Shown in pieces: positions 1,371 through 4,300 of a stretch of DNA of 12,782 nucleotides. Position 1 is the first letter of the stretch. Each line of letters starts with the position of its first letter. The position numbers were made by a program, and so were the translations under genes. Source of the stretch: Salpingoeca rosetta (lineage: Eukaryota; Protista; Choanoflagellata); contig JAWQFM010000017.1 of the NCBI GenBank assembly GCA_033442325.1, forward strand, positions 149,007 through 161,788, read 5' to 3'. Under the pieces are notes generated by a model, which had not been told where the DNA came from, ran no database searches, and worked only from the letters and a program-made list of their open reading frames with translations.

Positions 1371-4300
1371 ATGCCTGGGACACAACCGCATGGCTTGGAA
1401 GGGTACCCACCCTTGCGAAAGTCCGCGTTCAAGAGCTTCTTGCCGCGAGCCGTGTTCTCCTTGGCATGGGTCTTCATGACGCCGGCGTACTTGGCGCTCA
1501 ACTGGGTCGTGTCCATCTTCCGACCCACCACAGATGAGATTGTCAAGTTCCGCAGGTTGTGGCTTCCCATCGCCTGCATCATGCTCATCGTCAGTGTTCC
1601 CATCGCCCTCTTTGCGCTCCCCTTCTACATCCTCTCCCACCTCGGCCGCCGTGCCTTTACATACCACGTCTACGCAGAGGTGTGTATGTGTGTGTGTGTG
1701 TGCATGCATGCGTGCGTGTGCATGTGCATGTGTGTGCGTGTGTGTGCGGGCGTGTGTGCATGCGTGCGTGTGCATGTGCATGTGTGTGCGTGTTAGCGAC
1801 CCATGTGCCATCCATGCCCTTGCTTGATTGACCTGCTGCACGTGAGGCTGACCTCGCACGTATCACTGGCCATACTCTCTTCTTACATGTCCCACACCCT
1901 GTTGTGCAGCGCACCAAGCGCAGCATCAGCAAGACAGAGTGGACAATCGTGTCGTGCAATGCCCACCTGTTGCCAGAGGCGTTGGCGCGCAAGTATAACC
2001 TGCGCAACACATCCGAGCGCGCAAAGAGCCTGGCCGTGCGCATCGCCGCGTCCAACATTCAGCGGCACAGCGTCAACTTCAACAACGTGCTCAAGGACTT
2101 TCCCACGAGCGACTTCGTGTGCATGCAGCAGGTGTACGACCGCACGGCCGTAGAGCGCATTCTCTTCCATCTCCACCAATCGTTCCCCTTCATCGTCGAG
2201 GACACGGGCGTGCTACACTGGCGTTCCCATCGCCTCAGCGCCGGATCGGGCCTCATGCTGCTCTCCAAGTACCCGATTATGGACGCAGAATTCAAGACGT
2301 TCTCCGGCAGCGCAGGCGCTGATGGGCGATTCTGCCGTGGTCTCCTCCTCGCCAAGGTCAGTGTGTGTGTATGTTTGTGTGTGTGTGTGTGTGTGTGTCT
2401 GTGTGTGCGTGCTTGTGTATGTGTCTGTGTCTGTATCTGCGTCTGTGTCTGCATCTGCATCTGTCTGTGTGTCTGTGTGTGTCTGTATCTGTGTCTGTAT
2501 CTGCGTCTGTGTCTGCATCTGCGTCTGTCTGTGTGTGTTTGTGTCTGTGTCTGATTCCGTGCCCACCTGTCCATACCTGTGTCTGTCTGTCTGCCTGTAA
2601 CCATTTGCGCAACATTCGCCCTCATGCTCCCCTTGACCAACCCTCCCCCCGCCCCAAATCACCACCAGGTGCACCTCTTCAAGAAGAACAAGCCGGAGAA
2701 GCGTCGTTTCGTCGGCTACATCTTCGTCACCGAACTCCACGTGCGTATACATCAGCGGTGGTGTTAATGGTCGTGGCGGTGCTGATCATGTGGCATGATC
2801 GTTTGAATGTCAAGTTGGCACATACACGCACATACACGCACGCACACGCACACGCACGCACGGACACGCACACGCACTCATACAACTGTCTCTGTTTGTG
2901 TACACGAGTGCTGACACGCATGCACCATCACCGACCATCAGTCGAGCAACCCTGATATTCGGCGGCAGCAGTTGGAGGAGATTGAGCGGTTCACGCATAA
3001 CTTCCGCGAGCGCACCTCCAACCCAGGCGAGGTCGTCGGCTTCCAGGCCATCGCAGGTATAGAGGCGGTGCTGGTGCTGGTGCTGGTGGTGGTGGTGGTG
3101 GTGTGTGCATGCATGTGTGTGTGCGTGTGTACGTGTGTGTGGTGTGCATGCATGTGTGTGTGCATGCATGTGTGCGTGTGCGTGTGTGTGTGTACGTGTG
3201 TGTGCGTGTGCGTGTGTCGGTCTGTCTGTGTGGTTGCAATTGTGGCTGCGCCAGTGTTGTTATGCCTGTGATTACACATATCACTGGATGTGCGGCCGTG
3301 TGCGCCTTCACCAACACCTGCTTGTCTTTCCGCTGCCTCTGCAGGTGAATTCCACTTTGACAACGTGAGCCAGGTCCACAACACAAACTGGGAGCACAAC
3401 CTCTTCACACGGTACGCGCCCGACAACACTCACCTTTGACATGCCGTCAGCACCAAATCCATCGCAGCAGCAGCAGCCGCATCCACAACACACCCACACC
3501 ACCACACATCCACACACCAAGCACATCATAACCCCCCCCCCCCGTCCCCTTATTCCCTTCCTCCTCCTCCTCTCCTCCCCCCCCCCCCGTTTCGTTGGAC
3601 AGGTATCAAGATCCGTTCAGCGTAGCGCCGGGGCGGGACCAGTCGTGGTCGCTCACCACCCGGCNNNNNNNNNNNNNNNNNNNNNNNNNNNNNNNNNNNN
3701 NNNNNNNNNNNNNNNNNNNNNNNNNNNNNNNNNNNNNNNNNNNNNNNNNNNNNNNNNNNNNNNNTGGACCCGGCCCGCATCCACGAGCCAACCGTTGCCG
3801 TACCGTCGCACCTCACCGACATCCTGCTCAACCCAAACCTGCGCATGGACTACATTGCGCCCGTGCCCAAGATGGAGGAGTTTGTGCCTGGGATCAACAG
3901 GACGATGCGGCTGCTGCTGCAACACGCCGTGGGGCGACAGCTGCCCTCGCGTGTGCAGCACGCGGCGTTTGTCACGGCCCTGTCCCACGTCACGCCGTCC
4001 CTCCCGCTCATGGTCACGTTCACGATTGGCGAGAGCGACCACCACCGCCACCAGCAGCAGCAGCAACAGCAGCAGCAGCAACACCACCAGAGCGCATCCC
4101 GGCTCTCACGTGCGCTGAGCAGACACGGCGACGAAGAGGAAGCGGATGCCGTGTCCACACACACCAGGTTAGTATGATATGGCAAACGGGCGTGGGGGTG
4201 GGGTGCATCTGACTGTTTACTTGTGCATTGTCACGTCTGTTGGGTGGTAACTGAGCTCAAACGCATATGCAAGGTGAAGGCTTCTTCGAACAAAACAAAC

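What the first reader, a model, noticed from the sequence alone, without database searches (positions are those of the whole stretch)
1371..4035. nSMase2 homologue with its active site almost entirely rewritten: probable pseudo-sphingomyelinase
Seen: the frame and splice sites are intact and structural motifs are conserved, yet the EEP catalytic positions differ. QE becomes QQ (CAG 2129-2131, the Mg-binding Glu). The DK-switch DALASKG becomes DGRFCRG. THLH becomes TELH (2732-2734). GDFN becomes GEFH (3347-3355). RIDY becomes RTMR (3899-3910). TDHLP becomes TPSLP (3995-4000, loss of the catalytic Asp-His). Only the first-strand Asn (SCNAHLL) and the DK Asp remain. Known: these residues are required for Mg-dependent hydrolysis in nSMase/Isc1/DNase I-fold enzymes. 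Inference: this many targeted changes across four exons are neither sequencing error nor random decay, so the protein is probably selected for a non-catalytic role such as lipid sensor, scaffold or regulator of an active paralogue. I know of no described pseudo-nSMase2, but I cannot search.
Basis: partly seen in the sequence, partly recalled or inferred. Interest (0 to 1): 0.8.

Follow-up and report, generated by a model that had tools for sequence, protein, structure and literature searches.

The report
Catalytically dead nSMase2 of choanoflagellates
The gene is the Salpingoeca rosetta relative of animal neutral sphingomyelinase 2; it keeps the enzyme's fold and membrane anchor but has lost almost every catalytic residue, other choanoflagellates carry the same degenerate version under purifying selection, so it is most likely a conserved pseudoenzyme with a non-catalytic job.

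Summary
The window is Salpingoeca rosetta and the gene is PTSG_06443. It has seven GT-AG-bounded exons (1371-4765, + strand) and an open frame. Exon 2 matches human nSMase2 (PDB 5uvg, E 6.5e-14).

Of the ten catalytic and DK-switch positions, only N130 and D430 remain. The others are E364Q, K435R, H463E, D510E, N512H, D607M, D638P and H639S.

The changes are targeted. Of 43 positions that are at least 85% conserved in 56 homologues, S. rosetta keeps 34 of 36 non-catalytic ones but 1 of 7 catalytic ones (Fisher p 3e-5).

Three full-length orthologues (Barroeca monosierra, S. infusionum, Monosiga brevicollis) and several environmental fragments form one clade (support 1.0). All four full-length proteins lack K435, N512, D607 and D638. 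About 55 other homologues, Capsaspora included, are nearly all canonical.

- dN/dS against a close relative is 0.17.
- An AlphaFold model of the Barroeca orthologue (core pLDDT above 90) best matches 5uvg.
- The clade has gained a disordered tail of 105-140 residues ending in F-x-D-x-S-[ED]-[IV], which resembles a class I PDZ ligand.
- The 100-N gap is probably of zero length: the flanks join as CTG (Leu), in register with the orthologues.

I found no published description. Whether an active paralogue exists is untested.

The parts
1371..1679 (+). Exon 1. It starts at ATG 1371 and encodes the N-terminal membrane domain. That domain has two hydrophobic segments (about residues 27-50 and 62-90) and the juxtamembrane HLGRR-FTY motif.
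   Evidence: The translation is identical to the first 103 residues of PTSG_06443 (P0001). It aligns with the N-terminal domains of metazoan SMPD3-like proteins. Hydropathy peaks at residues 57-74 or later. The orthologue model has helices at 23-50 and 61-90.
1910..2356 (+). Exon 2, the first half of the EEP domain. N130 is retained (AAT 1958-1960). E364 is Q (CAG 2129-2131). The DK switch reads DGRFCRG (2321-2341), so D430 is kept and K435 is R (CGT 2336-2338).
   Evidence: phmmer against PDB 5uvg gives E 6.5e-14, with the alignment shown. The Pfam Exo_endo_phos hit is below threshold. All sampled words are present in more than 12 runs.
2669..2740 (+). Exon 3. It contains VTELH, where H463 is E (GAA 2732-2734).
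   Evidence: Alignment. The same state and the same exon borders occur in the relative L001.
2942..3056 (+). Exon 4, a helical segment (QQLEEIERFTHNFRERT).
   Evidence: Alignment. Borders are GT-AG and the reading phase is consistent.
3345..3411 (+). Exon 5. It contains GEFHFDN, where D510 is E (GAA 3347-3349) and N512 is H (CAC 3353-3355).
   Evidence: Alignment. The public model reads through this exon's donor site and ends at 345 aa.
3603..3664 (+). Exon 6, the part before the gap (YQDPFSVAPGRDQSWSLTTR plus one base, C).
3665..3764 (.). Assembly gap of 100 N. Its true length is probably 0 or a small multiple of 3.
   Evidence: The flanks join as C plus TG, which is CTG (Leu). This matches the conserved Leu and the residue count of the orthologues.
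3765..4167 (+). Exon 6, the part after the gap. It holds the last third of the EEP domain and the start of the tail. D607 is M (ATG 3905-3907). D638 is P and H639 is S (3995-4000). A poly-Gln/His run follows.
   Evidence: Frame 3767 onward. Alignment with orthologues and canonical homologues.
4507..4765 (+). Exon 7, the disordered acidic and Ser-rich tail. It ends in FVDMSEI (4742-4762) followed by the TAG stop.
   Evidence: The tail and its terminal motif align with B. monosierra, S. infusionum and M. brevicollis. Canonical homologues mostly end 7-18 residues after TDH-x-P. The tail is disordered in the orthologue model.

Best explanation
PTSG_06443 is the S. rosetta member of a choanoflagellate (Craspedida) clade of nSMase2/SMPD3-family proteins that lost phosphodiesterase chemistry in their common ancestor. 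They have since been kept as pseudoenzymes.

Shown here:
- The protein keeps the nSMase2 architecture: an N-terminal domain with two hydrophobic segments, a juxtamembrane linker and an EEP-fold domain.
- Only 2 of the 10 catalytic and DK-switch residues are intact.
- All four full-length orthologues lack K435, N512, D607 and D638.
- The replacement residues differ between species, so no new conserved chemistry has taken the place of the old site.
- The gene is under purifying selection.
- The clade gained a long disordered acidic tail with a conserved C-terminal F-x-D-x-S-[ED]-[IV] ending.

Inferred: the protein cannot hydrolyse sphingomyelin-type lipids by the Mg-dependent EEP mechanism. It most likely works as a membrane-anchored, non-catalytic scaffold or regulator. 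Its conserved parts are the membrane domain, the fold surface (possibly still a D/E-R conformational switch) and the C-terminal tail. The tail probably recruits a partner, and its ending fits a class I PDZ ligand.
For: Identity: P0001 is PTSG_06443 of S. rosetta, 100% identical.

Homology: 5uvg at E 6.5e-14.

Catalytic pattern, in the order N130 E364 D430 K435 H463 D510 N512 D607 D638 H639 (residue list from PMC9697135):
- S. rosetta: NQDREEHMPS
- B. monosierra: NEERQDQQTC
- S. infusionum: NQDREDKQTH
- M. brevicollis: NGRQHDGSCH
- about 55 other long homologues: nearly all NEDKHDNDDH

In SMPD2, the mutations N15A, E49A, D178A and H272A each abolish activity (PMC10682184).

Targeted loss: 1 of 7 catalytic positions kept against 34 of 36 structural ones, p 3e-5.

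Phylogeny: the clade is monophyletic with support 1.0. Its stem is 0.73 substitutions per site against a median internal branch of 0.14.

Selection: dN/dS is 0.17 over 173 codons with no indel and identical intron positions, against relative L001.

Fold: the AF2 model of orthologue P0151 has core pLDDT above 90, and its top PDB match is 5uvg (E 5e-28, TM 0.83 by target).

Tail: it is conserved in the four species and absent from most canonical homologues.

Expression: the S. infusionum orthologue comes from a transcriptome assembly with a complete ORF. S. rosetta runs guessed to be RNA hold 100% of exon 2 words but only 0.44-0.55 of the words in genomic 1371-3664. Exons make up 47% of that stretch.
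Against: - No activity assay exists. Loss of function is inferred from residues only.
- D510E and K435R are conservative changes. B. monosierra keeps E364, and two species keep H639, so weak or altered chemistry in some members is not strictly excluded.
- The PDZ-ligand reading rests on a three-residue pattern plus conservation. An LIR-like or trafficking signal is equally possible.
- The structure model is of the orthologue (57% identical), not of the S. rosetta protein.
- The gap was not read.
- All known members are craspedids. No acanthoecid sequence was identified, so the age of the inactivation is only bounded.
Confidence: 0.72

Rival explanations
1. The protein is still an enzyme. The remodelled pocket (Q, R, E, E, H and so on) would catalyse hydrolysis of another lipid or phosphoester, or act as a weak or metal-independent sphingomyelinase.
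For: The fold, N130, D430 and the substrate-groove scaffold are kept. D510E and K435R are conservative. Some orthologues keep E364 or H639.
Against: The replacements differ in every species: N512 is H/Q/K/G, D607 is M/Q/Q/S and D638 is P/T/T/C. That is the pattern of a relaxed pocket, not of a new conserved catalytic set. Single alanine mutations at the equivalent SMPD2 positions abolish activity (PMC10682184). S. rosetta lacks the metal-binding Glu, the general-base His and its Asp partner all at once.
Confidence: 0.08
2. The protein is a non-catalytic regulator or decoy of an active neutral sphingomyelinase paralogue. For example, it could form heteromers or compete for activating lipids. 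This is one specific version of the pseudoenzyme idea.
For: Many pseudoenzymes regulate active paralogues (general knowledge). The N-terminal lipid-binding domain and the juxtamembrane motif that activate nSMase2 are conserved.
Against: No canonical nSMase2-family protein from S. rosetta or any other choanoflagellate appeared among the named hits. In the tree the clade behaves like the choanoflagellate orthologue, not like an extra paralogue.
Confidence: 0.15
3. The gene is a decaying pseudogene, or an artefact of assembly or annotation.
For: There is a gap inside the gene. The public model is truncated at 345 aa. Pfam scores are below threshold.
Against: - The frame is open over 579 codons and all splice sites are intact.
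- Orthologues of 550-576 aa exist in three other species.
- dN/dS is 0.17.
- 34 of 36 structural positions are kept.
- The exon words occur in many independent runs.
- The canonical Capsaspora homologue is also below the Pfam threshold.
Confidence: 0.02

Closest known systems
Human neutral sphingomyelinase 2 (SMPD3, PDB 5uvg) and its paralogue SMPD5
   Same: The sequences are homologous (E 6.5e-14 for exon 2). 5uvg is the best structural match of the orthologue model (TM 0.83 by target, 28% identity). The architecture is the same: an N-terminal domain with two hydrophobic segments, a juxtamembrane linker and an EEP domain.
   Different: Seven of the ten catalytic and DK-switch residues are replaced non-conservatively or lost. 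K435 is R. The insertion of about 165 residues after the first strand is missing. A C-terminal disordered tail of about 140 residues, with a conserved terminal motif, is added.
Capsaspora owczarzaki CAOG_07238 (P0014), a canonical nSMase2-family protein from a unicellular holozoan
   Same: Same family, a short insertion and about the same length. It shows that the ancestral holozoan protein had a complete catalytic set (NEDKHDNDDH).
   Different: The Capsaspora protein is catalytically canonical and ends 12 residues after TDHVP. The choanoflagellate proteins are degenerate and carry the tail.
Monosiga brevicollis MONBRDRAFT_29438 (P0006), which UniRef names 'Sphingomyelin phosphodiesterase', plus the B. 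monosierra and S. infusionum orthologues
   Same: They belong to the same clade (support 1.0). They show the same class of catalytic losses and the same C-terminal motif.
   Different: The individual replacement residues differ. B. monosierra keeps E364, and M. brevicollis and S. infusionum keep H639. The database name of the M. brevicollis protein implies an activity that its residues do not support.
SMPD2 / yeast Isc1 and bacterial sphingomyelinases C (B. cereus 2ddr, SmcL, S. aureus beta-toxin)
   Same: EEP fold with a DK-switch region. They are the next-best structural matches.
   Different: They are much more distant (14-17% identity). All are active enzymes with the complete catalytic set.
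Ambulacrarian 'SMPD3-like' proteins (Antedon, Patiria, Ptychodera; P0012, P0021, P0010)
   Same: They are nSMase2-family proteins with partial active-site changes (H463Q, and D510N in echinoderms). They carry a C-terminal extension ending in a [ST]-x-[VL] motif.
   Different: They keep E364, K435, N512, D607, D638 and H639. They carry the large metazoan insertion. They lie within the metazoan clade.

Membership tests
nSMase2 (SMPD3/SMPD5-type) family, by descent | Significant sequence similarity to the SMPD3 catalytic domain | tested here: met
   Exon 2 against 5uvg gives E 6.5e-14. A phmmer search of 1.84 billion representatives returns SMPD3/SMPD5-like proteins.
nSMase2 (SMPD3/SMPD5-type) family, by descent | EEP (DNase I-like) fold closest to nSMase2 | tested here: met
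   The AF2 model of orthologue P0151 has core pLDDT above 90. Foldseek's top hit is 5uvg (E 5e-28, TMt 0.83). This was tested on the orthologue, not on the S. rosetta protein itself.
nSMase2 (SMPD3/SMPD5-type) family, by descent | N-terminal domain with two hydrophobic segments plus a juxtamembrane linker | tested here: met
   Alignment with metazoan N-terminal domains, hydropathy and predicted helices 23-50 and 61-90 in the orthologue.
Active Mg-dependent neutral sphingomyelinase | Active-site residues N130, E364, D510, N512, D607, D638 and H639 (PMC9697135) | tested here: not met
   S. rosetta has N, Q, E, H, M, P, S at these positions, so 1 of 7 is kept.
Active Mg-dependent neutral sphingomyelinase | DK switch, D430 and K435 | tested here: not met
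   D is kept but K is R (DGRFCRG). The orthologues have E/R, D/R and R/Q. A D/E-R salt bridge remains conceivable.
Active Mg-dependent neutral sphingomyelinase | Hydrolysis of sphingomyelin or a related phosphosphingolipid | not testable with these tools
   Needs an enzyme assay.
Pseudoenzyme | Homologue of an enzyme family that lacks essential catalytic residues while structural residues are kept | tested here: met
   1 of 7 catalytic positions kept against 34 of 36 structural positions, p 3e-5.
Pseudoenzyme | Maintained by purifying selection and conserved across species | tested here: met
   Orthologues in four craspedid species plus environmental relatives. dN/dS is 0.17, although dS of 1.2 is near saturation.
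Pseudoenzyme | Expressed | tested here: inconclusive
   The S. infusionum orthologue comes from a transcriptome. The share of S. rosetta run words fits spliced RNA.
Class I PDZ-binding C-terminus | [S/T]-x-hydrophobic-COOH, conserved | tested here: met
   The endings are SEI, SDI, SEV and SEV in the four orthologues, preceded by a conserved F-x-D.
Class I PDZ-binding C-terminus | Binding to a PDZ domain | not testable with these tools
   Needs peptide pull-down or binding assays.

The most novel reading that the evidence does not exclude
The dead nSMase2 of choanoflagellates may be a membrane receptor or sensor for sphingolipid-like molecules. It would use the old substrate groove and the D/E-R switch to bind without cleaving, and would signal through its PDZ-ligand-like tail. 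In S. rosetta, candidate ligands would include the bacterial sulfonolipids (RIFs) that trigger rosette development. As far as I know, their receptor is unknown (background: PMC3463246, listed).
Probability: 0.04. Interest if true: 0.9.

Novelty: new variant of a known kind. Interest (0 to 1): 0.58.

Why it matters
In animals, nSMase2 is the main regulated source of ceramide at membranes. It is central to stress signalling and to exosome formation. [quoted passage not shown] The more distant Capsaspora keeps a canonical enzyme.

This gives a natural separation-of-function allele of nSMase2. Whatever the fold, the membrane domain and the tail do without catalysis can be studied in S. rosetta, which is genetically tractable. 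It also bears on which lipid-signalling functions were present in the animal ancestor.

There are two practical corrections:
- The public gene model is truncated at 345 of about 580 residues.
- The database name 'sphingomyelin phosphodiesterase' for the M. brevicollis orthologue is probably wrong as a statement of function.

Tried and rejected
- Read laying. Splicing, expression and the gap could therefore not be checked with reads.
- Word-index protein searches. They returned only 5, 12 and 2 hits. They found no transcript-derived full-length S. rosetta protein, no further choanoflagellate members and no S. rosetta paralogue. These blanks are uninformative.
- Wrong frame. Protein 5 and the query used the wrong frame (3766). 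I repeated the search with 3767. The post-gap piece alone has no significant PDB or Pfam hit, so its homology rests on the multiple alignment.
- Pfam Exo_endo_phos is below threshold for all clade members and also for canonical Capsaspora. This is not evidence against membership.
- Cluster look-ups of 30 representatives. Most carry no name. None is a canonical choanoflagellate protein, but absence is not shown.
- Findings index. It holds nothing on sphingomyelinases in this genome.
- Literature. There were no hits for PTSG_06443 or for SMPD3 with choanoflagellates, and nothing relevant for pseudoenzyme with sphingomyelinase or for choanoflagellate with neutral sphingomyelinase.
- Overlap of the two gap flanks. 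They share the 7-mer ACCCGGC, but joining them there would break the frame and the three bases before it disagree. I rejected this in favour of simple abutment.
- An LIR-like reading of the terminal F-x-x-[MI]. I considered it, but M. brevicollis does not fit it cleanly.
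Full report
**What the window is.** The sequence is an intron-rich eukaryotic locus whose introns are full of (GT)n/(CA)n repeats. A phmmer search with exon 2 against 1.84 billion representatives found a 100% identical protein. 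The cluster look-up names it PTSG_06443 of Salpingoeca rosetta (XP_004991823.1, UniProt F2UFT8), a 'hypothetical protein' of 345 aa. The neighbouring genes are:
- a 153-aa membrane protein on the minus strand (96-554; no Pfam hit);
- a BLOC1S1/GCN5L1 homologue on the minus strand (PF06320, E 8e-9);
- IMP dehydrogenase downstream, recognised by eye from the translation and consistent with a first-reader note listed.

**Gene model and the gap.** I reconstructed seven exons, all with GT-AG borders and a continuous frame:

| Exon | Coordinates |
|---|---|
| E1 | 1371-1679 |
| E2 | 1910-2356 |
| E3 | 2669-2740 |
| E4 | 2942-3056 |
| E5 | 3345-3411 |
| E6 | 3603-3664, gap 3665-3764, 3765-4167 |
| E7 | 4507-4765 (TAG stop) |

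This gives 357 residues before the gap and 219 after it. The public model reads through the exon-5 donor and stops in intron 5. It therefore lacks the last third of the catalytic-type domain and the whole tail.

The frame before the gap ends with one base (C) and the frame after it begins with two (TG). If the flanks simply abut, they form CTG (Leu). The result...SLTTR-L-DPARIHEPT..., lines up residue for residue with B. monosierra ...SLTTR-L-NEKALIQPA... and with the other orthologues. Both S. rosetta and B. monosierra have 20 residues between TTR and LLNP. The 100-N gap is therefore most likely a placeholder for a join of zero or near-zero length, and the gene is continuous.

I could not confirm this with reads.

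Exon 2 aligns with the human nSMase2 catalytic domain (5uvg) at E 6.5e-14. That alignment shows CLQEVFD against CMQQVYD and DDALASKG against ADGRFCRG. Multiple alignments with 19 and then 76 homologues place the remaining motifs.

I used the human residue list from PMC9697135: active site N130, E364, D510, N512, D607, D638 and H639; DK switch D430 and K435; plus H463. Only N130 and D430 are unchanged, and K435R and D510E are conservative.

In SMPD2, alanine substitutions at the equivalents of N130, E364, D510 and H639 each abolish activity (PMC10682184).

**More than chance, and not an error.** Among 43 positions that are at least 85% conserved in 56 long homologues, S. rosetta keeps 34 of 36 non-catalytic ones. 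These are prolines, glycines, the SGL motif, the Cys and the Phe and Trp residues. It keeps only 1 of 7 catalytic ones (Fisher p 3e-5).

Exon 2's sampled 31-mers are all present in more than 12 runs from several studies. About 18 runs hold at least 85% of the words of 1371-3664.

**Relatives.** The nearest hits are choanoflagellate proteins:
- Barroeca monosierra, 576 aa;
- S. infusionum, 560 aa, from a transcriptome with a complete ORF;
- Monosiga brevicollis MONBRDRAFT_29438, 550 aa;
- unnamed environmental fragments 56-72% identical to exon 2, some from TARA.

All the named species are Craspedida. Their catalytic patterns are NEERQDQQTC, NQDREDKQTH and NGRQHDGSCH. About 55 other long homologues are almost all NEDKHDNDDH, including Capsaspora, amphioxus, molluscs, brachiopods and vertebrates.

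All four full-length choanoflagellate proteins lack K435, N512, D607 and D638. By parsimony the enzyme was inactivated in their common ancestor. The replacement residues differ from species to species, and E364, H463 and H639 survive here and there. That looks like continuing drift in a pocket that no longer matters, not like a new conserved chemistry.

In a FastTree phylogeny the clade is monophyletic (SH-like support 1.0). Its stem of 0.73 substitutions per site is about five times the median internal branch.

**Selection.** A 1-kb genomic contig from an unnamed close relative (L001) carries exons 2 and 3 with the same intron positions and the same QQ, DGRFCRG and TELH states. Over 173 codons there is no indel. 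Amino-acid identity is 71%, dN is 0.21, dS is 1.21 and dN/dS is 0.17. Because dS is near saturation, the ratio is only approximate, but it is clearly far below 1. Intact ORFs of about 560 residues in four species point the same way.

**Fold.** AlphaFold2, run on the B. monosierra orthologue with a 59-sequence alignment, gives pLDDT above 90 over most of residues 11-457. It predicts two long N-terminal helices (23-50, 61-90) and an alpha/beta sandwich. Residues 458-576 are disordered. Foldseek's best PDB match is 5uvg (E 5e-28, TM 0.83 by target, 28% identity). Bacterial sphingomyelinases, SMPD2 and TDP2 follow.

**A new part: the tail.** Most canonical homologues end 7-18 residues after the TDH-x-P motif. 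The choanoflagellate proteins continue for 105-140 residues. This tail is poorly conserved overall but has short conserved islands:
- (E/D)-x-DLD-x-S followed by an acidic and Ser-rich run;
- the C-terminus F-V-D-M-S-E-I (S. rosetta, 4742-4762), which is FVDMSDI, FLDISEV and VVDVSEV in the other three.

The last three residues fit the class I PDZ-ligand pattern [S/T]-x-hydrophobic-COOH. From my own knowledge, choanoflagellates have PDZ scaffold proteins (Dlg, Shank and others), so this is plausible. It remains an inference. Ambulacrarian and amphioxus SMPD3-like proteins also end in Y-E-[ST]-[TA]-[VL].

**Expression.** The evidence is indirect. The S. infusionum orthologue is a transcript. For S. 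rosetta, runs of two studies hold 100% of exon 2 words. They hold only 0.44-0.55 of the words of the genomic stretch 1371-3664, of which 47% is exon. That is what spliced RNA contigs would give. The tool labels these runs only as guessed RNA.

**How it most likely works.** Shown: the protein is a membrane-anchored nSMase2-fold protein without the catalytic machinery, it is conserved under purifying selection, and it carries a clade-specific tail with a conserved terminus.

Inferred: it has no Mg-dependent phosphodiesterase activity. It probably acts as a scaffold or regulator at a membrane, and the tail recruits a partner.

Because the pocket residues are not conserved within the clade, I rate a pocket-based ligand sensor lower than a scaffold or adaptor role. 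The retained D/E-R pair at the DK switch leaves room for a lipid-responsive conformational switch. Regulation of an active paralogue is possible, but no such paralogue was seen. Its absence could not be tested, because the word-index searches were uninformative and most representatives are unnamed.

**Known or new.** Four literature searches found no description of a pseudo-nSMase or of this gene. The protein is a member of the nSMase2 family by descent and fold. It fails the defining catalytic features of an active sphingomyelinase. I classify it as a new variant of a known kind: a conserved pseudoenzyme branch of the nSMase2 family. Pseudoenzymes are common in general. The interest lies in which family this is, and in the position of choanoflagellates as the sister group of animals.

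Noticed in passing
window 3412-3440 (intron 5) and P0001: The public model PTSG_06443 (345 aa) reads through the exon-5 donor and ends ...TRYAPDNTHL*. It misses about 235 residues: the last third of the EEP domain and the tail. The likely cause is the gap at 3665-3764.
   Followed up: yes
window 5100-7070, minus strand: A multi-exon BLOC1S1/GCN5L1 homologue (Pfam PF06320, E 8e-9 on exon 5486-5572 and E 0.02 on 5672-5740). It is interrupted by the 400-N gap at 6504-6903.
   Followed up: partly
window 96-554, minus strand: A 153-residue ORF with several hydrophobic segments and no Pfam match. It is transcribed divergently from PTSG_06443, with about 800 bp between the two start codons.
   Followed up: partly
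window 7304-11855, plus strand: An IMP dehydrogenase gene with many short exons. It is interrupted by the 572-N gap at 10580-11151.
   Followed up: no
P0012 (Antedon), P0021 (Patiria), P0010 (Ptychodera): Ambulacrarian 'SMPD3-like' proteins carry H463Q. The echinoderm ones also carry D510N, and Patiria carries N130D. The Patiria and Ptychodera proteins end in a PDZ-ligand-like YETTV and YESTV. This may be a second, milder case of active-site change in the family.
   Followed up: partly
L001 1-1042 (Logan contig of SRR24908322): An unnamed close relative of S. rosetta has the same intron positions around exons 2 and 3 and the same QQ, DGRFCRG and TELH states. Its introns are not alignable by eye with those of S. 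rosetta.
   Followed up: partly
P0004, P0156 (ENA/TARA): These environmental gene calls include a translated (GT)n-type intron (a Cys/Val/Phe-rich run) between exons 1 and 2. Their lengths and 'insertions' are therefore artefacts.
   Followed up: no
P0006 (M. brevicollis XP_001749944.1): UniRef names this orthologue 'Sphingomyelin phosphodiesterase', although it lacks E364, D430, K435, N512, D607 and D638. Its model also lacks the N-terminal domain.
   Followed up: partly
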